A stretch of 64,000 nt of DNA. Source: Ostrea edulis (lineage: Eukaryota). A program made the translations under genes and the position numbers. Shown here one piece after another: positions 8,711-21,264 of the stretch. Every line of letters starts with the position of its first letter. Within the stretch, counting starts at the first letter, position 1. Below the pieces are notes generated by a model that saw only the letters and a program-made list of their open reading frames with translations, was not told where the DNA came from and did not search any database. The stretch is from NCBI RefSeq assembly GCF_947568905.1, contig NC_079172.1, forward strand, positions 43,214,001-43,278,000, given 5' to 3'.

Positions 8711-10190
8711 AAAAGATTAACAAATTAACATTGTAGTCATTTTCACACAAAACATGTAGATTATGCACACCAAAATGCAAATTGACTATCTGGACTAGTC
8801 AATATTTCATAATAGACATATAATATGTTCTATCAATTCAGCTGAAATTCAGATAAACCAAAATTCATAAGATATACATGTATTTATATCTACAATCCAT
8901 GAAATATGCCATTGGCAGATTTGAGGGGAGATAGATCTCCACCTCATGACCCCCCCCCCCCCCCCCTATTTGAATTCCTGGGTCTGCAATACTAGTATAT
9001 ATAGAATTGCACACTAAAATGTTTGTTGACTATCTGGATTAGTGATAATTCAGCTGAAATTCAGATAAATCAAAAAATCTTAGATGCCAGTCGCAGATTT
9101 AACCCCCCCACACCCCACACCCCCCATCCCCAAATTTCTGGATCTGTTCCTGTATGCAGTTTTACATACCAAATGTATATACTATAATATTATAAACTAC
9201 TGCAGCTACATAGTGGTGACAAAACTGACTCGTGGGATTGCCATATGTCACTGATATGATTTGGTGTCAGTAAAAAGTTCTGTCTTCATTTTATAGAAAT
9301 ATCTTTATGAAATGATTTAGATAAATTTCTAAATGAAACTGTAAAACGTTCAAAATCATAGAATAAAACAGGGCTATATATCCATGTTATACACAACAGG
9401 AAAAAGTTTTATTCTTTTCGAGCTCTAGCGTTTTCACTCGATGCAGATTATTACCGGGGGGGGGGGGTAACCACAACATCAATCAAGAATCAGTCTAATC
9501 AGAACTACGCAAATATATTGCTGAGATTTTGATCGAGGACTTTCGATATCTTGAGCTAAACTCTGAGATATAGATGTATGGGTGTATATGATGCAAATGA
9601 CTGTACAGTGCATGATGCAAACGACTCTATAATGTAAACATACCTGTAGCTGTACTTTGTTGGAAAATGTCTCGTATTGACGCTTGAACAACCGCTGTAA
9701 TAAACCAGAGCTCTATCTAGAACACATTTTCTAAACTCAGTTGTTATCCACCGCGCTCTCGCTTTTTGTAGTAAGCTCTATGTGGTTTTGAACGTAGCGA
9801 GTCTAGTACATTATTGATAACGCCATCCTGACAACTGCCCGGAAGTACGATTTCACGTTATTTCTCGCGAGTCACATGACGAGACTTTCCGACCCTAATG
9901 TTCCTAGCAGAAACAACACGTAAGACATGGGCGAATCCAGAAGGGGGGGGGGGTCCAGGGCGTCCTGACCCCCCTCCCCTTTGGAGAACCAAACAATTTA
10001 AGAATTATTCAATTTTAACGAGACTTTGAGTCCAAATGATATGAATGGTAGATACTTACATGTATATGTACTACTAATTGCTTCATTCAAATTTATCAAC
10101 ACCAGTATGATTATCATTTAATTCTAGGATAAATAAGACGACACACTGATGAAATATTTACGATATTTTCGTCAGATGCAAGTATCGCTT

Positions 10191-10284
10191 CAATCTAATT
10201 AAAATTAGATGTTTGATCCGCTCGCGTACTCGCATACATAACATCTAACAACATCCCATGGAGGGTCACGTCAGAGGTCAAATT
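10191..10284 (+). repeat. Left terminal inverted repeat (94 bp)
   Basis: CAATCTAATTAAAATTAGATG...GTCAAATT; base-by-base reverse complement of 20773-20866. Confidence 0.97.
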
Positions 10285-10380
10285 TATGTAAAAATATCGA
10301 CCAATCATTGCGAAGACGGAAGAACCTTTTGTGACCAATGAGAATCAGTTGTACAAACTACGTTTGGTTGTTGAAGGAAA

Positions 10381-12922
10381 ATGGCGGCGAAAGACAGTAC
10401 AAGCGAGGCGATTGAAAACGTGCTGAAAAAATTTAATATCCAAAGTTTAAAACGCGAACAGCGACAGGTGTTACAGTGTCTGTTAGACCGGGTAGACTGT
10501 ATGGCGGTCCTCCCGACTGGATTTGGAAAATCCCTGCCCTTCCAAATGTTAATCCCTGTCCAGAGAGAGATGGGCAGCAATATTGGGAAAATAATTGTGT
10601 GTTGCCCATTGATTTCCCTGATGCAGGACCAAGTGGCACGTTTACAGGAAATTTCCAGATATGACAGCTGCATATAAAGGTTAGTGTGTTTACTATTGTT
10701 TTGAATATTGCGAAGTCGAAATCAGTTGAATAGGTGATTTATAACTTAAGCGTTGTGGGAATCATATTGTGTAAATTAACTGACATTGAATATTCGATCT
10801 CATGTTTTTAAAAAAGAAAACTTAAACTTTAAGATTCTCGTATCATAGTTTAACATGTATTATTTATCAGGTTAATGTGCCCGAATGTTATTCACCCCAT
10901 GTCTTATATCCTGCAATTTTCATAGCTTTTCAAAACTATTTGCAATGGCTTGATTAAGCTAGTATTAAATGAACTTCTAAAATGCAATGGCATAGCCCTA
11001 ATGTTGCATAATAATTTTGGAACATCTTTATACATAGTTGAAGTATTTTTCACAATGTGTTTTGTGGAGTACAATGATGAAATATTTTCACTCAGTAAAA
11101 TTTATTTTCTATGCTCTTACAAATCCATTTGATAAAAGATATGAAATAGCTAAATCAAGCTGTTTCAAGTAGTTTTTGTTAGCTATACAGCTTTATAACT
11201 AAATATATACAGATTGTGTTGAACCTGATTGTATTTGCACATGTGAAATCAATTAGAACAGGTATATTATAAAAATTAAAATATATATTTGAAGGGTCCA
11301 GTGATGAAACCGACAGAAAAATACTGGAAGGAACAGTAGACATAGTGTATGGCTCCCCAGAGGCATTAGTTGGCGACATAGAATGGAGAGAATCTATGCG
11401 TAATCTTGATGTCACTACTATTGTTATTGACGAGTTTCATACAATAGCAACATGGTAAATGCATTTTTGTTTTAAAGTCTAGTTGTAAATGACTAGTAAA
11501 GGTGATGTACACTATAAAGACCAATAATTCTTGATTGATTTGTACCATTAAAATTAAATTTGTCTTGAAGCATCCCCCCTAATGTTGGATCAATCTATGT
11601 ACTTGGTACACCCAAATTCTACCCTTTTCTTGATTTTTGTGGAATTTCAGAATATTGTCTCCCTCCACCCCCCAACATCAATTAATTTAATGATCATATT
11701 CAGTTTCCCTTCTGTGTTGACATTTATTATATATTATTTGCTAAGCATTTTCTGTTATCACCAGTAAACTTGCCATTGTTTTAAGACTTGACTTATGTAC
11801 ACATGATGTAGGGGAAAAAAACCATTCTCGAGTCAGGCATATTATTTTTTACCATTATGGCTGGAGAAGGGCAAAATGAGTTGTAAACGTGACCCAAAAA
11901 GGTTTAAATTATAAAGAAATGATGTTACAATAAAATTAAATAAGATTGTCAACTGAAAGTTGCCTTAAAACTTAATTTTTTCTTCATATATTTGCTTTAA
12001 CAGGGGTCAAAGTGAAAATGGCAAAGAGGCTTTTAGGAAATGGTTTGGACACGTTGGGGAGCTAAGGTCCATGTTTCCAGATGCAAATTTGTTGGCCTTG
12101 TCTGCAACATGCACAAAGAAAATTGCTAGACGTGTTAAAAAGTGTCTGGGTGATGGAACAGTGGAAATCATAATTTCTCCTGACAAACCAAACATCAAAT
12201 TATCAGTGACTAAGGTATCAACCAATATAGAGAACTCTATGTTTTGGATAATTGATCCACTTCAAGAATTACAAGAGAAATTTCCACGGGTAATAATTTA
12301 CTGTACCTCAATTAATGATGCAGCAAAAGTTTGCAATTACTTAATCGAAGAAGTGCCATCAAGTGTCCGAAATATTGAATTATACCACTCAGAAACAGAA
12401 GATCTTAAGAAAGAGTACATTGTTAATGAACTGAAAGACTTTAACAGTTCTCTTCGTATCCTGATTTCTACAAGTGCTTTAGGCATGGGAATAGATGCCA
12501 AAGGATTCCACAGTGTGGTTTTATTTGGAGCTCAATCAAACTGTTCTGATCTTATACAGGAAATTGGAAGAGTAGGAAGAGACAACATGCCATCGGTTGC
12601 GTTAATTGTTTACAACTCGTATCACCAACGATTAGCAGATGAATCTGTCAAGAAAATTCTTGTGACAAAGGAATGTCGTAGACTATGTCTTCTAGAAAAC
12701 TTTTTGAATGACAAGGGAATACAAGAAATTAGAGAAAATATTTTGGGACATCACACTTGTTGCGATAATTGTGCAGCAAAATGTTCTTGCAATAAATGTG
12801 AACTACTGCCCATCGAAAAAATGTTCAATTTTGCTAATGTGTACTCTGCGCCAGACAGTGATAGTGACGAGACAGAGTATTATGATTCTTTTGATGAAGA
12901 AATACATGATTTGATAGAGTAA
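10381..12922 (+). CDS. RecQ-like superfamily 2 helicase of AcademH (3 exons; ~458 aa after correcting a 1-bp frameshift in exon 1)
   Basis: Exons 10381-10679, 11295-11454, 12004-12922 (GT-AG). Motifs: I PTGFGKS, Ia CPLISLMQDQ, II DEFH, III SAT, V TSALGMGID, VI QEIGRVGR, then CRR...CCDNC Zn module. An extra T at 10652-10654 creates TAA at 10675-10677; removing it restores phase with exon 2. Confidence 0.9.
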
Positions 12923-14334
12923 TAAAATCTGAAGTTATACCAAAATAAATTATGTGTGTTTCCTACTTTACTACCCCCAAAATTATGTAGGGTTACCAGT
13001 TAAAACATTTAATTCAAAATCTTGGTTTTTGATATGCTTCCATGTCTATATACAAATACAATTACTTTTCAAATACTTTGACGATCAATAGTTGTCAAAA
13101 TGTAGATCAGACAACTTGAACACAAAAAGCAAAATATTTCCAGTTTGAAAATTATATATATATAAATATATCGATAAAATCTTGAGGGTTGATAGAGAAA
13201 ATGTTGTTAGGGTCGGTAAACCGGAAACACACATATTTTATTTTGGCTGTTGTGATATTTCCAATCACCATGATATCTAGTTTATATACAACTGAAGTGT
13301 AGAATAAAAATGCATAAAATTTAAAGGTAATAAAGTCTATCCTGTTTTTTCAACTACATGAATGTTTGCATCACTAATTTAATGGACACCAATTATTACA
13401 GAATCATGAGCCATTCTAACAAGTTAACTAAGTTCACCAAATGTTTATGGCGAATATATTCTTTGTTATTGAATTATGAGAACTTGTTTTCCCAAAAATA
13501 TATATTTAATTAAGGAGGTACTCTACATCATCATAATGGCTGAACATGCAAAATACTAGTGCATCAGCTCCAACTGCGCGAAGTGTTTAATATACTAAAA
13601 TAAGTGCACATAAGATATTCAGTTTCTTTTGACATCAAATTTCTTCATTATAATCTACATGTTACTTCAAGCATTATCTTTTTGTCTCTATTGAGATTCA
13701 CCACTGACATATTAAATCACACAAAGTAACAATGACACTTGAACCATTTATTTTAGCTTAAATAACTTTTGCAATATGTTGTACAAGTTAACTGGTCACA
13801 TCTGCACAATCTCTGCTGTCTGCACTGTGATGTATCACATTTATTAAAGCAAAACCGTGTTATATCTGTACTTGAAAAGCGATCAAAATACTCTTACGAA
13901 TTGAGATAAGTTACAGAACCATTAGATATTAAGTCCCGGTGTATGATACTAGCGTGTGCATCGATAAGCCTGCTATACTTAAACATGCATCAAAGGAAAA
14001 CTAAATGGTTTACTGTAACAATGGCTAATTATCTTTACACTATTCAATGAGCACATTAAAAAATGTACTATACAGTAAAACATGCTTAAAAAGAAATTCA
14101 TGCTTAGTGTGACGTGCTATTTATTCCCCTATAAGAGGAAATTTGCGACAAGGTTTGGTTTTAATGAATTGTTCTTCACTGATTCTGTAAGTTTGTTACG
14201 ACTTTGTTTCTATACGATAAATGATGTACAACAGGGTGATTGAACTTAGCATTGAAAGGAATAAACAGAAAGTTACCATACAAAATAACTGATAACATGC
14301 ACAAACTTAGCACTGTGTCATATCAGTTCTCAAT

Positions 14335-17300
14335 TTAAACATGTGGATCTCTTAGTCGTATAAAAGGTTGTCTTGGCTTATGTCGGTGTATCACAGTTGA
14401 TAATCCAACAAATGAATTCTGGAAGGGGTTCCTATCCACTGTGAAACCTTGACACTTAAATGTACGCTTTGGAATGAGGGTCATCACATTTGCTTCCTGT
14501 AAATCTTTGAACACCTTTAATACATCACCCTTGTAACTGGGAATGTGATGGAAGCCCTTTCTCTTTCTGATCTCAGTAATGCTGTCAAAATGGCCGACTA
14601 AGTTTATTAAATGAGGATATTCCTTTGAGTGGGCGAGGATACTTTCCTTTGTTTTGTGACCAGAGCAGGCAATTTTACTATCTCTATTCAACATCTCAAG
14701 GTATTCATCTAAGGACACATTGTTGTTCTTTCCTCCTTGCAAATTGACAAAGCGATTGGCAATTAGACGTTCCTTTTGATTATCACAGAGAATACCAGAT
14801 GTTAGAGATGTTAAATGAATAGAACCAATAGCGTATTTCACTTTGTTAGTGAGATGGTATACAGGTAGTTCATATTTTGCGGATCGCACAGCCCTTTCGC
14901 CATCCCCCATGTCCACAGAAGTATCCAAATTCTTGTGCAAAATTACAAGTTTGAAAAGCATCATCAGGTAATCCTGCATTTGGTCTTGGTTTTTATTTTT
15001 TGGTTTTTTCGATGGTTTGGCAATATGAACATCATGGATTTTTTGTTCATGAGTTTGCAATGACACAACATGCGCATAGGTTTTATCACAGTGGTGGCAC
15101 TTAAATCTCCCTTCCTCTCGTGTTGATGTCCAATAGTTTTCAGGATGCTGTGGATCACACACAATATCTCGAACATTTTGGAATATGTCATTAGTGTTGT
15201 CAAAGAAATGTTTCCTCAAAATGTTTTCACTCACTGAATCAATGTACTCTATCTTTTCTCTGTTTGACAATACTGCAAAGTTGGACGGCAGATCTATTTC
15301 TTGGTCAATGTCTGAAACACCCATGTGATGTAGAAAAAGCAGCAAACAGATGGCATCCAGGATCACATAATACAACATCTTGTATGCTCGGTATGCATTA
15401 TACACATGACCTTTGACATTTCTCATGTTCAGGAAATTTCTGCAATTCATACACAAGAATTTTTTACACACCATTCAAAATTTACAAAACCGTTAAATAA
15501 ATGAAGTACACACAAAATATAAGTTTCTTATAAAAGTATACATACCTGTAATAGTATACTGTGCCTCGGTCCATAGCACTATATGTTGAATAAGTGAGCT
15601 TGTGTATGGCCTACAATTACATATTAATATTGCAATCAAATTATAAAGAAGTTAGTACCAAAGCACTAATCTCAAATATTTCAAGTACAAACACAAAATT
15701 TATATAAGGGTATGGATTTGTGCATGTTAGCCACTGATAAGAAATTTCAGGTCAGAACTCTTTGCACATATATCAGGAAGTTTCTTTACATATTGTAAAT
15801 CAGAAAAACATGCATTTTCATCAATGATACCTCTAGGAAATTCATCAATCTGTGAAAGTCTTCAATTTTTGAGACAAAGCCTTGAAGTCTTTGAAGCTGT
15901 GTTTCAGCATTATTCATGGCCTTTTGGGCTGCTTGCACCCGTTCATCAGTTAACCTATCGCCTAATAATAAAAAAATAATTAATTCACACTTGAATTGTT
16001 TATTGGATATCATGATTCTAGAAATTGACGATTGCCCAAACATTTTTCACAGACTGCATATATTGGAATTTTAAATTACTATTTTGCCAAAATGAAGATC
16101 AATACCTGCATTACACACATGTGCACACTATTACATCTCTTTGGTATAATGTATTATAAATTAGAGATCCCACACACACCCCTAAATCCATATGAGAAAA
16201 CAAACCTCCAAAAAATACAGGTTCCACAACTTCTCCATCCCTGCAAGGAACATATGTAGACAAGGTCTTCAAAAGACGTATCAATTCTGGTGTCTTATTT
16301 TCATTACAGTCGAAAAGACCAAGTGGGTACTGAATAAAAAAATAATTTAAGATCATATGCAAAATTCTGTAATTAATCAATGATAATATTCTCTAATTAA
16401 TCGAAGATAATATAAACTATTACATAAAGTACATGGTACACACCTTTCAACAATAATTATAAATTTCAGTAAAATGAAAACTTAGAAATAGAAGAAAACT
16501 CATGACTTACTTGTTTAGTTTTGTTTCCTGCACAGTAGGAATATTTATGCTCTAAATGTTTTGGATAAATTTTTCCATATTCTTTCTGCAAGTGGGGATG
16601 ATTTTCAATGACAGAAGTGGAGAAGAGAAATGTTAGTTCCTTCATTAGTTTCTGTTGGTCTTCAATGGATGGAAGAAAAGTTGAAATTTCAATTTCATGG
16701 GAAGGAGGACTGTGGGAGCTGTGTTCAGTTGGAATTACTCTGTCCAGGATGGCATAAACGTGAAAGAGATGAAGAGAGAGAGTTTTCCTGTCAGACGTTC
16801 TATACGATGGAAGGATGTTTTTGTCCCAGTTGTCCCCAATTATTTGGTATTTTACATTTCCTCCTTCAACCCAAGAATCACGGATTTCTAAAATTTCTTT
16901 GTCCAGTATTTTTTGCCAGTCACAAAGCTTTCTCTTCAAAGTCAATGGGTGGACAGTCAATCCTATATGTGACAGTCGTTCAATGTCCTAAAATTAAGAT
17001 TTAAATATTGTCAATATCAAGTTTTACTGTACAGATTGGAATGCCACATTAATTCTAATAAAGAGTTATGTTTACAGGAAATAAATATTACATATATTTT
17101 GCATAAACAAAATGAAAATTTACCCGCTGTGTACATCCACCATGATTTAGCAGAAATCCATTCATGTACTGCAAAACTGTCATCTCTTGGCTTCTTCCAT
17201 GTAGTGCAATACCTACAGTTTGTAGGGCATGGAGAAATGGTTTGCTTCCAATAACAGGTGGTATGTCTGAAACGGTAGCTGTAATGATTGACAGTAGTGC

Positions 17301-20300
17301 TGGGCACATTGTTTCAAGTTGTTTGTGTAAATTTTCCCACCGGAAACTGAAAAAGTCTGCATTGCTTTTCTTTTGTAGAAGACTGCCCGATCCCCTCTTA
17401 CAAATTGCTTTACATTCCTCCTGCACAATCTTTTGAGAGCCGCGTACCAATTCCAATGGACTAGACTTCCGCAGAATGTCAACTATGACAGTTTCTGTAT
17501 TTCCTCCTCTTGCTATAGCTTTGCATATCTGTTGGTGGGTGTCCTCTTTGATGATTGACGACTTTCTCCCACTTGGATAGTGCAGTACAACCTAGCATTT
17601 AAAACATAAAAGATATTACCTAAAAATATATTACCTACAAATTATACAGACATGTGCGTATATCTAATATGTTACAAAGAAATATATTTAACGATTTAGT
17701 GTTTGATCTCAGTGTTGTTAACAGCAACAAATCTATATAGTTTTAGACTTATTTGATAGAAAATTACTGCTTGAGCACTTAATGTCAAATTCTTGAGAAC
17801 ACGTTGGACCTCTCTTCCCCCCCCCCCTTGTAAAACTTTATTTTAAACTATATTTATTTCAAAAACATAAGAACATGATTACACATATCATTTGAATAGT
17901 TGAGATCAAAATCAAGCAAAGATGCACTTATATCAATTCTACTTCCATTAAAACTTTGATTCCATATTTTACCCCATGATTTGAACGATCTTGAACCTAC
18001 ACTATATCAGGAAATTTTCACAAGTTTTATCTTTCCAGACCCAGTGCTTCTTCAGTTGAGAACCCTAGTCATATATGAATCTGTACAAAGAACTGCATAC
18101 ATACTATCACTAATCATGGCCAGTGGTCTTTGATAAGGAAATTGCTAAAGATTATATATATTTAATGTCAAAATGGAGCCCCCTCCCTCATGATTTGAAG
18201 AAACTGCAATATGCAGATGGTCTTGTTGGACTCAATGTATTATCAGAAAATCTCACTTGAGCTTTCAGCTGAGCTTAATAGTCAACAGATGCACAAACAG
18301 ACAAAAAGTTATCAGAAAAACTTACTTGACCTTTTGTTTCAAGTAAGCTAAGAAAAACTCCACTTTGGCAGAGAAACATAGTGTTAAAATCAACTCAAAG
18401 ATAAATGAATTGGTTAGTCATTTACAATTCTATAGCTAAGCATGCACAACAGACCTACAGTTTGGGGTAAGTACTGATAAATCCAAACCTCAAACAAATT
18501 GTAGTGTTGGAGATATCTTTTTAACATATGAATTTTCTGAAAGCTATAAATTTCATATATGTATCTAAATCTCAAGGAACTTGAAATGTACCCTGTGAAC
18601 AGAGACTACAATCGATGAACACAGTGATTTTTCTACATTTTTTATAAGGGTCCTGTGGCTTTAAAACTGGGAAAAATTGTCGACATTTCAGTCAAATTCA
18701 ATTTTATCGTAAATAAGTTTTAAAATCATATCTAACATTATTTTATCTTTATTTTACTAATCTAGTTTTCTTTAACCTTCTAAAATTTTCAACTATTCTA
18801 TCCAAATCATCATTCCCATAACTCTTTGTTAAGTTTCACATATAGAATGTTTATTTCTTTCAAATACGTTTTCCTTTCACAATTTTATTATTGGGAAAAA
18901 TGTAAGCTAAATTGGGAAAGAATTAGCAATTTTTAGGAGGGGAGAGGGCCGAAATTCTGACCCAAAATGGGCCTTAAAAAATCACTGGAACAGAAAATTC
19001 AAAACAAACGTTGAAACAAATCAAAAGAAAAAGGAAAACAAAATTAACAATTTTCAACAATTTTAACATTGCACCTCTACTTTTCCATCAAGAGAGCATT
19101 TGTCTGATTTTGGTTTGCTCTCTTTGTCACTGAATAAGGATCTCTTTGAAGATTTTGGAACTGTATCTGTCACAATGACGTACATATATATGTATTAAAA
19201 TGCAAAAGACCAATCAATACCTTTCATGATTTTAAGCCTTGAAAGTCTAATTATCATTCTTGATACATTTTAAGACTTTGGTATAAATGTAAACATACCT
19301 GGTCTCTCTGTCTTTGGTGCAATAGAGACAACACTGTATCCAGTGTCTGGGACCTGTTAACATACACAAAAATTGCAAATACCTTAACAGCATACCAAAA
19401 CATACACATACATGTACTGTCAATATTTATTTAATGATTGACTAAACATTATCTTTCATATGAGTTAATGTACCTGTAAAAGTTTCTTCCAGGATTCTTC
19501 TCCAAGCAACAGGGGTGGTTGTGATCCTGTGATGCTGCCTACGATAAAGGGGGCAAGAGGCTTTAGTTTTTGAGGTGTCACTCTTCGAATCGGTACTAAC
19601 ATAGTAGATGTCTCTGTCTCCTCTGAGGCTTTCGAGCGTTTCCCAATTCCCAAAACTCCTGGACTTCTAATTTCTCTCTTCTTAATGACTGTTTTTGATG
19701 GTGAGGGCACAGTAACACTATATCTGCAAAGTTTTCATAAGTTTTATAGGTTTAACATGACCCATAACATGAAATGAGTATATATAGAATATGAGTATAT
19801 ATACTTATGATAAGATACTTCCATTGATCATGAAATTCAAGCTAGATATGGAAAGAAATAAGGTAATTTTCATTACAGCATTTTTTGTATGTATGTTGAC
19901 AATTCTCTTCAGAAACATATCTTACCAAAATGTACCAATTAAATTTATCTAGTATATATACATTTCAAATATTTTTCAATCTGAGTTGAAGGTAATAAAT
20001 GTTGAGTCTATGGGATTCGCGGAAACACAGAATAAAAACACCAATAAATATACACTAATTTATCAATAATTTTTTTTTACAGGATTTCAGTTCATCCATC
20101 TTGAATAACTACAGTACACCAAAATAAATGACGCGACGGCACATTCATTTTCCTGTAGGTACTCCTACTAGAGTTTAGAGCTTTTATTTACTGGTACAAC
20201 TAAGAATCCCAGAAATCCTTATTTGTTGCTGCTTCTTGCTACATCTGATCTTAACATTGATCAGCTGTTGATACCGGTGTTCAGGCTTCACATCATGTGA

Positions 20301-20658
20301 CATTTAAGCAATAACTCTCCTTATTATACACTAACCTTGACATGGTTGATCGTATGTTACTTGTAAATCTCTCCCTTGCCTCCATCGCCTCTTTTTCCAA
20401 TTTGCGCACCCTGTCCATGGCCCGAAAACATTTCTGACATACACCCGCGTCACCAGGAAAACAAGTCTCTTTCTTCACATCACACACGTTCAGTAACGTT
20501 TCCAATCTTTCACGTGTTAATCTTAATTTTTTATCCAAACACTTTTGAACTTTTATGCTGCCTAATTCATCTACAAACTTTGTAACAAACGAAAACCCGC
20601 ACACAACACAAATGTTTCCAAACGAATAGCATTTGACAGGCGTAATGCGCGCCGCCAT
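14335..20658 (-). CDS. Academ-family transposase (DUF6589-like), 10 exons, 1029 aa
   Basis: Exons (-): 20658-20336, 19723-19474, 19353-19299, 19166-19075, 17591-17124, 16987-16511, 16329-16206, 15961-15831, 15610-15546, 15439-14335. Total 3090 nt, all GT-AG, phases consistent, no internal stops. Motifs IGDNWD..R..SLHLF, GGDRLT, KIEDFH, LDEYLE; N-terminal CxxC..CxxC; internal C2H2 finger. Confidence 0.88.
17970..18353 (+). mobile_element. Helentron/HINE-like repeat fragment in transposase intron 4
   Basis: Shares CCATGATTTGAAC...TATCAGGAA and CACTTGAGCTTTCAGCT motifs with 29346-30531. Confidence 0.55.
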
Positions 20659-20772
20659 TGTCTTGGTTCGGATCACGTTTTTTTTTTTTTTTTACATTCG
20701 GAACCACTCTAGACTTATTCCCTTCGACGAGCATTTAAAGAGTTTGCCAGATGTGATTTCATTGGTCAATTG

Positions 20773-20866
20773 AATTTGACCTCTGACGTGACCCTCCATG
20801 GGATGTTGTTAGATGTTATGTATGCGAGTACGCGAGCGGATCAAACATCTAATTTTAATTAGATTG
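20773..20866 (-). repeat. Right terminal inverted repeat (94 bp)
   Basis: Reverse complement of 10191-10284; followed by the TSD GTATCGCTT. Confidence 0.97.
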
Positions 20867-21026
20867 GTATCGCTTTTAAAAAGAATTCTTAAAAAGTATA
20901 TGTAACATTAAAAAAAATTGTTTAAGAAGTAGAGAACTTGAAAGTGAAAAGGAAGTGCCAGGAAATGTTCAGAATGCAGGACAGAATGCAAGATCGAGTT
21001 GCACCATTTACCCTACTGGGACTAAC

Positions 21027-21037
<11 letters not shown>

Positions 21038-21104
<67 letters not shown>

Positions 21105-21119
21105 CTCTCTCTCTCTCTC
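21038..21119. repeat. (CT)n microsatellite
   Basis: Direct reading. Other (CT/GA)n tracts near 28613, 42498, 47500, 53472; (TA)n near 33248, 40005, 40409, 58075. Confidence 0.95.
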
Positions 21120-21264
21120 ATTTCTTTGCGATATCAGACATAGATAGCGGATGGACGTTGTGAAAAGTATCTAAAAGATCAAGTGCTGACCCCCCTCCCC
21201 CTCCCCTACTTCAAAAATTCCTGCATCCGTTTCTGTAAGCTCAAATTACAGAGATAGAATGATA

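What the first reader, a model, noticed from the sequence alone, without database searches (positions are those of the whole stretch)
10182..20875. Complete, very young AcademH-type transposon with a RecQ-like helicase
Seen: 94-bp TIRs with no mismatch, a perfect 9-bp TSD, an open 1029-aa 10-exon transposase and a convergent 3-exon helicase with all SF2 motifs and a RecQ-type Zn module. Established: AcademH is the helicase-encoding Academ lineage with ~9-bp TSDs; to my knowledge the helicase's role in transposition is not established. Inference: a recent insertion from a probably still active family, and a good experimental template for a helicase-assisted cut-and-paste system. The helicase could be mis-annotated as a host RecQ gene.
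Basis: partly seen in the sequence, partly recalled or inferred. Interest (0 to 1): 0.75.

Follow-up and report, generated by a model that had tools for sequence, protein, structure and literature searches.

The report
Young oyster AcademH transposon, helicase frameshifted
This is a very recently inserted 10.7-kb cut-and-paste transposon of the flat oyster, of the already described helicase-carrying Academ type. Its transposase gene looks intact, but its RecQ-like helicase gene is broken by one extra base that all its youngest sister copies share.

Summary
The ends are confirmed: perfect 94-bp TIRs (10191-10284 / 20773-20866) and a 9-bp TSD, GTATCGCTT. The flanks belong to a dispersed repeat. 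In at least 8 other copies of that repeat the two flanks abut and overlap by exactly 9 bp, which are paralogous empty sites.

The genome (Ostrea edulis) holds at least 8 full-length copies:
- Six are 99.4-99.9% identical to this one, from five independent insertions with 9- or 10-bp TSDs.
- There are also 262-bp MITEs and a 196-bp deletion derivative.

Transposase (minus strand): it carries DUF6589, its close homologue models as an RNase H-fold DDE enzyme, and it is open in my 8-exon, 980-aa model.

Helicase: it has three exons (junctions seen in spliced contigs of a related organism) and all RecQ motifs plus a Zn module. An extra C at 10655 puts a TAA after codon 98. All seven young copies share this C; older relatives lack it.

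So the copy is not complete. The young subfamily spread with a dead helicase, which was either supplied in trans or is dispensable.

The scan noted AcademH elements twice before elsewhere in this genome. This is a new member of a known kind.

The parts
9897..10181 (.). Left flank: part of a dispersed host repeat into which the element inserted
   Evidence: A 300-bp flank query matches at least 40 other loci at 90-96% identity.
10182..10190 (.). Left copy of the 9-bp target-site duplication GTATCGCTT
   Evidence: Read directly. It is present only once in the paralogous empty sites.
10191..10284 (+). Left terminal inverted repeat, 94 bp
   Evidence: 100% complementary to 20773-20866. There are 54 or more TIR matches in the genome.
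10381..10679 (+). Helicase exon 1 (start codon, RecQ motifs 0, I, Ia). It is frameshifted by an extra C at 10655, with a premature TAA at 10675-10677.
   Evidence: Pfam DEAD 1.6e-9 and recQ_fam 6.6e-15. The donor at 10679 is seen in spliced contigs. The extra C is shared by copies A, B, C, D, F, G and H. It is absent in E, I, J, K and in the X1/X2 contigs.
11295..11454 (+). Helicase exon 2 (motif Ib region and DEFH motif II)
   Evidence: Pfam DEAD 1.6e-6. Joints 10679|11295 and 11454|12004 are GT..AG in X1 and X2.
12004..12922 (+). Helicase exon 3 (WG..FR, motifs III-VI, CRR...CCDNC zinc module, acidic tail, stop codon). There is no RQC or HRDC domain.
   Evidence: Helicase_C 3.6e-16; recQ_fam 3.2e-32. 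The WRN alignment includes the zinc module. Mollusc homologues are 45-52% identical.
14335..15439 (-). Transposase last exon: insertion domain with a C2H2 finger (15099-15034), the catalytic D/E helix (LDEY at 14712-14701), and the stop codon
   Evidence: DUF6589 6.4e-14. Joint 15546|15439 is seen in X1. There are 723 homologues. D and E are invariant in 32 of 32 aligned homologues.
15546..15610 (-). Transposase exon 7 of my model
   Evidence: Both joints are seen in the X1/X2 contigs, CT..AC on the plus strand.
15831..15961 (-). Transposase exon 6 (begins with the second catalytic D: GG|DRLTDE)
   Evidence: Joint to 15610 is. The loose end at 15963 continues at 16208. GT..AG is placed at 16205/15962.
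16206..16329 (-). Transposase exon 5
   Evidence: tblastn with P0069, P0078 and P0088; acceptor at 16329.
16511..16987 (-). Transposase exon 4 (first catalytic D in GDNWD, 16837-16823)
   Evidence: tblastn hits at 47-49% identity. Strong splice sites at both ends.
17124..17591 (-). Transposase exon 3
   Evidence: tblastn with P0069 residues 10-132; donor at 17124. The joined model is colinear with P0069 over 753 aa at 52% identity.
19474..19723 (-). Transposase exon 2, modelled only (basic, proline-rich linker)
   Evidence: It lies on the longest open canonical path. There is no RNA or homology support.
20336..20658 (-). Transposase exon 1: start codon and an N-terminal CxxC...CxxC zinc module
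   Evidence: tblastn with P0071 residues 3-91. CVVC and CQKC are found. A distant homologue hits zf-AD weakly.
20773..20866 (-). Right terminal inverted repeat, 94 bp
20867..20875 (.). Right copy of the TSD GTATCGCTT
20876..21166 (.). Right flank: continuation of the same host repeat
   Evidence: In at least 8 paralogues it abuts the left-flank match with a 9-bp overlap.

Best explanation
Window 10191-10866... corrected: window 10191-20866 is one copy of a recently active 10.7-kb family of AcademH-type cut-and-paste DNA transposons of Ostrea edulis.

Shown:
- The element inserted into a pre-existing dispersed repeat and duplicated 9 bp of target.
- It carries two convergent genes, each starting about 100 bp inside a TIR.
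- The minus-strand gene encodes a roughly 980-aa transposase. It has an N-terminal CxxC...CxxC zinc module and a DUF6589 core.
- In a 52%-identical homologue this core models as an RNase H fold. [quoted passage not shown]
- The plus-strand gene is a minimal RecQ-like helicase: two RecA domains plus a zinc module, without RQC or HRDC.
- In this copy and its six nearest relatives the helicase gene is inactivated by a 1-nt insertion. The insertion stops translation after codon 98, before motifs Ib to VI.

Inferred mechanism:
- The transposase binds the 94-bp TIRs, excises the element and integrates it with a 9-10-nt staggered cut.
- The five independent insertions of the young subfamily happened after the helicase lesion.
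- The helicase therefore acts in trans, coming from other AcademH families in the genome, or is not needed for mobilisation. The gene-less MITEs likewise rely on trans-acting proteins.
For: Ends and insertion:
- TIRs and TSD are confirmed.
- Empty-site paralogues show the two flank matches overlapping by exactly 9 bp. Examples are C1:18530767/18530775, C3:34530715-34530723 and C5:82836795-82836803.

Family:
- Copies B, C, D, F, G and H are 99.4-99.9% identical to the window copy. TSDs are 9 bp in A, B/C/D, E, F and H, and 10 bp in G and I.
- All six distinct 262-bp MITE insertions checked have 9- or 10-bp TSDs. A 196-bp derivative has 100%-identical TIR parts.

Helicase:
- Pfam and NCBIfam give RecQ-like hits. 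The best PDB matches are WRN 3e-19, RecQ 5e-14 and RECQ1 1e-12.
- Spliced contigs give both junctions.
- The extra C at 10655 is present in all A-type copies. It is absent in E, I, J, K, X1 and X2.
- Homologues read '..SAAYKGSS..', as the unshifted frame does.
- All seven A-type coding sequences stop at codon 98.

Transposase:
- The model is open in A, B, C, D, F and G at 980 aa, and in H at 973 aa. It is colinear with P0069.
- The P0069 model has pTM 0.77. Its best fold matches are all DDE transposases: P element and Hermes Z 9.2, ISCth4 Z 8.5, RAG1 and Transib Z 6-7.
- The D, D and D/E residues are conserved.

Other species and literature:
- The same convergent helicase plus DUF6589 pair occurs in Mytilus californianus and Patella caerulea.
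- AcademH has 9-10-bp TSDs (PMC10045372). Academ elements are amplified in bivalves (PMC10294476).
Against: - Membership of the transposase in the Academ superfamily could not be tested against Repbase sequences. The link between DUF6589 and Academ is indirect.
- The spliced contigs come from a coded 'organism A'. They are only about 95% like this copy, and the run kind is a guess ('RNA?'). Transcription and splicing of the window's own subfamily are therefore not shown.
- The two 5' transposase junctions are modelled only.
- A helicase-intact allele of this subfamily could exist outside this assembly.
- Copies B, C and D may be assembly redundancy rather than a real duplication.
Confidence: 0.8

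Rival explanations
1. The copy is fully autonomous. A functional helicase would be made despite the extra C, by use of the weak donor at 10639, by programmed +1 ribosomal frameshifting at ..ATT TCC AGA.., or by some other recoding.
For: All seven young copies keep exons 2 and 3 open, and the lesion is a single base. A canonical in-phase path 10639|11295 exists. Reading TCC and then skipping one base would give the same residues as the ancestral frame (my inspection).
Against: The 10639 donor (CAC|GTTTAC) matches the consensus poorly. It would remove about 13 conserved residues between motifs Ia and Ib, which are present in all homologues. The spliced contigs use 10679. No known +1 frameshift signal was identified. 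The copies are so young that open downstream exons say nothing about selection.
Confidence: 0.06
2. The element belongs to another DDE superfamily that also has long TIRs and 9-10-bp TSDs (MuDR/MULE), or to a helicase-carrying Kolobok lineage. On this reading it is not Academ.
For: Long TIRs with 9-11-bp TSDs are also typical of MULEs (established knowledge). KolobokH and Kolobok-1_CCri also encode RecQ helicases (PMC9587614). The IS256-family transposase ISCth4 scores Z 8.0-8.5, close to the top fold matches. Academ membership was not tested against reference sequences.
Against: There is no Pfam hit to MULE, Transposase_mut, hAT or other transposase families, only DUF6589. Kolobok makes 4-bp TTAA TSDs (established knowledge), whereas all 11 insertions here have 9-10 bp. 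The combination of a helicase on the other strand, 9-10-bp TSDs and an animal host is the published AcademH definition (PMC10045372). Academ is known to be amplified in bivalves (PMC10294476).
Confidence: 0.08
3. The helicase is a host RecQ-family gene, or a recent capture of one, and merely lies between two transposon ends.
For: The sequence is clearly RecQ-like. Relatives are annotated as host RecQ, RecS or WRN-like genes.
Against: It is carried inside every full-length copy at five independent loci. It lacks RQC and HRDC. Its matches to solved RecQ-family chains are weak: WRN 72 bits, bacterial RecQ 56, RECQ1 51, BLM 31. Its matches to TE-linked mollusc helicases reach 331 bits and 45-52% identity. 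The helicase-DUF6589 pairing recurs in a mussel and a limpet.
Confidence: 0.02

Closest known systems
AcademH lineage of the Academ superfamily (Kojima 2020, Mob DNA 11:15, cited through PMC10045372 and PMC10799480; the paper itself is not held)
   Same: TIR-bounded DNA transposon of an animal. It has a DDE transposase plus a separate SF2/RecQ-like helicase gene and 9- or 10-bp TSDs. The helicase's role is unknown.
   Different: In this copy and its whole young subfamily the helicase gene is frameshifted, yet the subfamily kept inserting. Direct sequence membership in Academ could not be tested here.
AcademX lineage (XPG nuclease-encoding Academ)
   Same: Presumed same transposase superfamily.
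   Different: AcademX makes 3-4-bp TSDs and encodes a nuclease (PMC10045372). This element has 9-10-bp TSDs, a helicase and no nuclease hit among the ten largest open frames.
KolobokH and Kolobok-1_CCri (RecQ-helicase-carrying Kolobok elements, PMC9587614)
   Same: A DDE transposon that carries a RecQ-type helicase. In Kolobok-1_CCri the helicase is also on the complementary strand.
   Different: Kolobok TSDs are 4 bp, TTAA (established knowledge). KolobokH is reported only from fungi, with the helicase fused downstream of the transposase.
MuDR/MULE superfamily
   Same: Long TIRs, 9-11-bp TSDs and an RNase H-fold DDE core with an insertion domain.
   Different: No MULE or Transposase_mut Pfam signal. 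MULEs do not carry a RecQ-like helicase.
hAT (Hermes), P element and Transib/RAG1 transposases
   Same: These are the best structural matches to the modelled homologue: an RNase H fold split by a large helical insertion domain.
   Different: Sequence identity is only 9-13% and Z is about 6-9. TSD lengths differ (8 bp and 5 bp), and there is no accessory helicase.
Cellular RecQ family (WRN, RECQ1, BLM, RECQ5, bacterial RecQ)
   Same: The helicase core motifs and the CRR...CCxxC zinc module are shared. WRN is the best solved match.
   Different: A minimal protein of about 460 aa without RQC winged-helix, HRDC or exonuclease domains. It is multi-copy and transposon-borne.

Membership tests
AcademH (Academ superfamily) | Target-site duplications of 9 or 10 bp | tested here: met
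   Copies A, B/C/D, E, F and H have 9 bp; G and I have 10 bp. All six distinct MITE insertions and the deletion derivative have 9-10 bp. Paralogous empty sites overlap by 9 bp. The criterion comes from PMC10045372.
AcademH (Academ superfamily) | Terminal inverted repeats bounding the element | tested here: met
   94-bp TIRs, 100% complementary.
AcademH (Academ superfamily) | Encodes an SF2 (RecQ-like) helicase in addition to the transposase | tested here: met
   The gene is present with all motifs. In this copy it is frameshifted at 10655.
AcademH (Academ superfamily) | Transposase groups with Repbase Academ DDE transposases | not testable with these tools
   Repbase and the Kojima 2020 and Yuan & Wessler 2011 alignments are not on hand. 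Indirect support only: DUF6589, an RNase H-fold DDE model, no other transposase Pfam hit, and Academ being abundant in bivalves (PMC10294476).
Autonomous (complete) element | All element-encoded genes have open reading frames | tested here: not met
   The transposase model is open at 980 aa, but the helicase stops after 98 codons.
Kolobok (KolobokH) | 4-bp TTAA TSD | tested here: not met
   TSDs are 9-10 bp with varied sequence. The criterion is from established knowledge.
MuDR/MULE | MULE or Transposase_mut catalytic domain detectable by Pfam | tested here: not met
   Only DUF6589 and zinc-finger hits were found in the window exons and in the full-length homologues P0069 and P0141.
Cellular RecQ helicases | RQC winged-helix and/or HRDC domain after the zinc module, in a single-copy host gene | tested here: not met
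   There are no such Pfam hits, and the protein ends about 45 aa after the zinc module. The gene lies inside every copy of a multi-copy element.
RecQ family (helicase core) | RecQ-type motifs 0-VI plus a four-Cys zinc module | tested here: met
   recQ_fam TIGR00614 is the best family: 3.2e-32 for exon 3 and 6.6e-15 for exon 1, both below the full-length cut-off. The WRN alignment spans CRR...CCDNC.

The most novel reading that the evidence does not exclude
The young subfamily is a natural helicase knock-out that still transposed at least five times. This would mean AcademH mobilisation does not require a helicase encoded by the moving copy. In the stronger form the RecQ-like helicase is dispensable for cut-and-paste itself, or helicases from about 50%-identical sister families cross-complement. 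Alternatively, the shared +1 lesion is decoded by programmed frameshifting.
Probability: 0.3. Interest if true: 0.6.

Novelty: new member of a known kind. Interest (0 to 1): 0.42.

Why it matters
What the RecQ-like helicase of AcademH elements does is not known. This family offers a natural contrast: an intact transposase with a helicase that was already dead when at least five insertions happened. Intact helicases from other AcademH families are reported in the same genome.

That makes the question of whether the helicase is needed, in cis or in trans, directly testable with natural sequences.

It also matters for annotation. Mollusc gene sets list many of these transposon helicases as RecQ, RecS or WRN-like host genes. 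The kind of element itself is already described, and Academ elements are known to be abundant in bivalves.

Tried and rejected
- An extra helicase exon. An open frame at 10959-11040 reads 'NGIALMLHNN' and resembles RecQ. I enumerated splice chains through it. I dropped it once the spliced contigs and homologues showed that the missing strand lies in exon 1, in the other frame.
- An intact helicase in the 96% relatives at C2:23.96 and 23.99 Mb. They are only about 1-kb fragments of the element.
- Copy E as an intact source. It has the right frame at 10655 but carries +7 nt in helicase exon 3 and a broken transposase.
No such path passed my splice thresholds.
- Reading Kojima 2020 and Yuan & Wessler 2011. 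Neither is held.
- Linking DUF6589 to Academ in the literature or in supplements. Nothing was found.
- Exact look-up of the two exon-1 peptide variants in the protein collection. Neither is on record.
- Presence/absence at this locus and RNA from the window's own subfamily.
Full report
**Observation**

The inverted repeat is real. The arms 10191-10284 and 20773-20866 are 94 nt long and 100% complementary. Directly outside them lies GTATCGCTT, at 10182-10190 and 20867-20875.

A stronger test than counting matches came from the flanks, which belong to a dispersed repeat. I searched the genome with 300 bp of left flank ending in the TSD and 300 bp of right flank beginning with it. In at least 8 other loci the two matches abut and overlap by exactly 9 bp. 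Examples are:
- C1:18530767-18531070 with 18530456-18530775
- C3:34530423-34530723 with 34530715-34531040
- C5, C6, C7 and C9 likewise

These are paralogous empty sites. The 10,676-bp stretch is therefore an insertion that duplicated 9 bp of target.

**Genome and family**

The window is C9:43214001-43278000 of an 895-Mb assembly. Contig C1 has the same length (112,480,954) as the NCBI contig that carries Ostrea edulis proteins. Earlier notes of this scan also call it the flat oyster.

The TIR finds at least 54 places. I fetched eight further full-length copies:

| Copy | Location | Difference from the window copy (A) | TSD |
|---|---|---|---|
| B, C, D | C9, 63.13-63.43 Mb | 0.08-0.13% | GCGGAAGAC, same flanks in all three |
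| F | C2 | 0.31% | 9 bp |
| G | C1, with two nested insertions of about 1.5 kb | 0.25% | 10 bp |
| H | C1 | 0.34% | 9 bp |
| E | C2 | 1.4% | 9 bp |
| I | C1 | 91-93% identical, rearranged | 10 bp |

B, C and D share one TSD and the same flanks. They are one insertion that was later duplicated, or assembly redundancy. Each of the other copies has its own perfect TSD.

Short relatives also exist. All six distinct 262-bp MITE insertions that I checked have perfect 9- or 10-bp TSDs. A 196-bp internal-deletion derivative on C7 has 100%-identical TIR parts and a 9-bp TSD. The family has moved very recently and repeatedly.

**Helicase**

Three plus-strand open frames carry DEAD and Helicase_C. Their best NCBIfam family is recQ_fam. 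The best solved relatives are WRN (3e-19), bacterial RecQ and RECQ1, and the WRN alignment runs through the CRR...CCDNC zinc module. By eye the frames contain RecQ motifs 0, I, Ia (PLISLMQDQV), II (DEFH...WG..FR), III, IV, V and VI. The protein ends about 45 residues after the zinc module, without RQC or HRDC.

Contigs of two runs (X1 and X2) show spliced joints with GT..AG ends at 10679|11295 and 11454|12004. These runs are coded organism A, their kind is guessed as RNA, and they are about 95% like this copy. Their depth is zero in the first intron.

The frame is not open. With the donor at 10679, the window reads ...LQEISRYDSCI and then TAA (10675-10677).
- Copy E, copy I, two fragments on C2 and the X1/X2 contigs lack one C at 10655. 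They read ...LQEISDMTAAYKG| into exon 2.
- Independent mollusc homologues read ...LSAAYKGSS... at the same place.
- The extra C is therefore a derived frameshift. It is shared by A, B, C, D, F, G and H. In all seven the coding sequence stops after 98 codons.
- The only canonical in-phase alternative donor (10639) is weak and would delete this conserved strand.
- Copy E is broken elsewhere, with +7 nt in exon 3. I found no copy of this family with an intact helicase.
- Contigs of run X3 (organism B) agree with the window across 10255-11161 without a gap. An assembly error is therefore unlikely.

**Transposase**

On the minus strand the last exon carries DUF6589. Evidence for the junctions is as follows:
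- The X1/X2 contigs give joints 15546|15439, 15831|15610 and 16206|15961. The last comes from a loose end whose continuation I located at 16208.
- Homologues found with the last exon number 723 at E <= 0.001. They placed the exons 17591-17124, 16987-16511 and 16329-16206, which have strong splice sites.
- Exon 1 (20658-20336) matches the N-terminus of P0071.
- The link through 19723-19474 is only the longest canonical open path.

This 8-exon model gives 980 aa. It is open in A, B, C, D, F and G. It gives 973 aa in H and is broken in E. From residue 225 it is colinear with a Pinctada imbricata protein, P0069, at 52% identity over 753 aa. I could not reproduce 10 exons and 1029 aa.

The joined coding sequence was built only inside local scripts from the stored files. 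It was used to count stops and to check colinearity with P0069.

**Fold**

I modelled P0069 with 33 homologues. The model has pTM 0.77 and high confidence from residue 180 onward. It shows the order of an RNase H fold: strand-strand-strand-helix-strand-helix-strand. A helical insertion of about 270 residues holding a C2H2 finger follows, and then the helix that carries the invariant D and E.

All leading structural matches are DDE transposases:
- P element and Hermes, Z 9.2
- ISCth4, Z 8.5
- RAG1 and Transib, Z 6-7

These Z values are moderate, so the fold class is supported but no particular superfamily is.

The conserved residues are as follows:

| Motif | Conservation among aligned homologues | Window position |
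|---|---|---|
| D in GDNWD | 11 of 12 | 16837-16823 |
| D in GGD | 12 of 14 | split by the intron at 16206\|15961 |
| D and E in LDEYxE | 32 of 32 | LDEY at 14712-14701 |

**Classification**

The literature held here says that AcademH makes 9-10-bp TSDs and AcademX makes 3-4-bp TSDs, and links the difference to the helicase or nuclease they encode (PMC10045372). It also says that Academ elements are amplified in bivalves, with 100 curated autonomous families (PMC10294476).

The same convergent helicase plus DUF6589 pair occurs in Mytilus californianus and Patella caerulea. The O. edulis genome holds more than 100 DUF6589 matches.

Two rivals were considered:
- Kolobok lineages also carry RecQ helicases (PMC9587614) but make TTAA TSDs (established knowledge).
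- MULEs share the TSD length and long TIRs, but no MULE domain is detectable.

I could not compare with Repbase Academ sequences, and Kojima 2020 is not held. Superfamily membership therefore rests on architecture, not on a tree.

**Mis-annotation**

The closest named proteins are NCBI models called RecS, RecQ-like, WRN-like or Q1-like. They come from O. edulis, Crassostrea, Saccostrea, Mytilus, pectinids, Pinctada, Patella and Haliotis, and are 39-52% identical. No annotated O. edulis protein matches this family's own helicase closely, which fits its being broken.

**How it most likely works**

Shown: the ends, the TSD, the insertion, the gene content, the helicase lesion, and the recent multi-site spread.

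Inferred: the transposase binds the TIRs through its N-terminal zinc module, cuts out the element and inserts it with a 9-10-nt stagger. Because all five independent young insertions carry the same frameshift, they were made when the moving copy could not encode a full helicase. The helicase either works in trans or is not needed. Earlier notes of this scan report intact AcademH families of 11.4 and 11.7 kb elsewhere in this genome; I did not test this.

**Verdict**

The finding is a real, very young member of a known kind. It is not complete. Its interest lies in the natural helicase knock-out, not in the element type. The scan had already noted AcademH elements on other DNA of this genome (s1-287427, s1-306990).

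Noticed in passing
G000 C9:63134188-63144866, 63313047-63323727, 63421265-63431945 (loci L031-L036): Three copies share the same TSD (GCGGAAGAC) and identical flanks, 108 and 179 kb apart. They differ from each other by 0.08-0.11%. This is either a recent segmental duplication that carried one insertion, or redundant haplotype sequence in the assembly.
   Followed up: partly
G000 C7:1461470-1461665 (L006, L047): A 196-bp internal-deletion derivative keeps 49 bp of one TIR and the full other TIR at 100% identity, with the 9-bp TSD TGATGCATA. It looks like a product of abortive gap repair after a recent excision.
   Followed up: partly
L025-L030, L048 (L049 is the same locus as L025): A 262-bp MITE family has TIRs 89-94% like this element's. 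It was seen at about a dozen loci, which is a lower bound, and all six distinct insertions checked have perfect 9-10-bp TSDs. TIR depth in the read contigs is roughly 100 times the internal depth.
   Followed up: partly
window 9897-10190 and 20867-21166: The element sits inside another dispersed repeat with at least 40 copies. Left-flank matches are 90-96% identical and right-flank matches 75-85%. I did not classify this repeat.
   Followed up: no
window 13510-13543: A stretch of about 34 bp in the intergenic spacer has about 75 times the contig depth of its surroundings in run X3, with many loose ends on both sides. It is a short piece shared with a high-copy repeat.
   Followed up: no
window 12940-12976 / 13210-13246: A 37-nt inverted repeat, 81% complementary and 233 nt apart, lies just after the helicase stop codon. 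It may be a nested MITE or a terminator-like structure.
   Followed up: no
window 10385-10389: Contigs of X1 and X2 end here against Illumina adapter sequence. This suggests transcript 5' ends within a few bases of the helicase ATG at 10381. The 5' UTR would be very short and the promoter would lie in or just inside the TIR.
   Followed up: no
copy G, G000 C1:60741364-60755153 (L041, L042): Two nested insertions of about 1.5 kb each lie at positions equivalent to window ~11840 (helicase intron 2) and ~12970 (spacer). They have 7- and 9-bp overlaps at the breakpoints. Both transposase and helicase exons are untouched.
   Followed up: no
run X8 (coded organism C): Low-depth contigs (3-7x) are 100% identical to parts of the element, although the run is labelled as a different organism. 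More than half of what was laid runs on into unlike sequence. This could be oyster DNA in another sample or a very recent sharing of the element.
   Followed up: no
G000 C2:23956665-23957650 and 23992177-23993160 (L070-L073): Two fragments of about 1 kb are about 95% like the element's left end, from part of the TIR to helicase intron 1. They lie inside a larger duplicated block that is 98.7% identical over more than 9 kb.
   Followed up: partly
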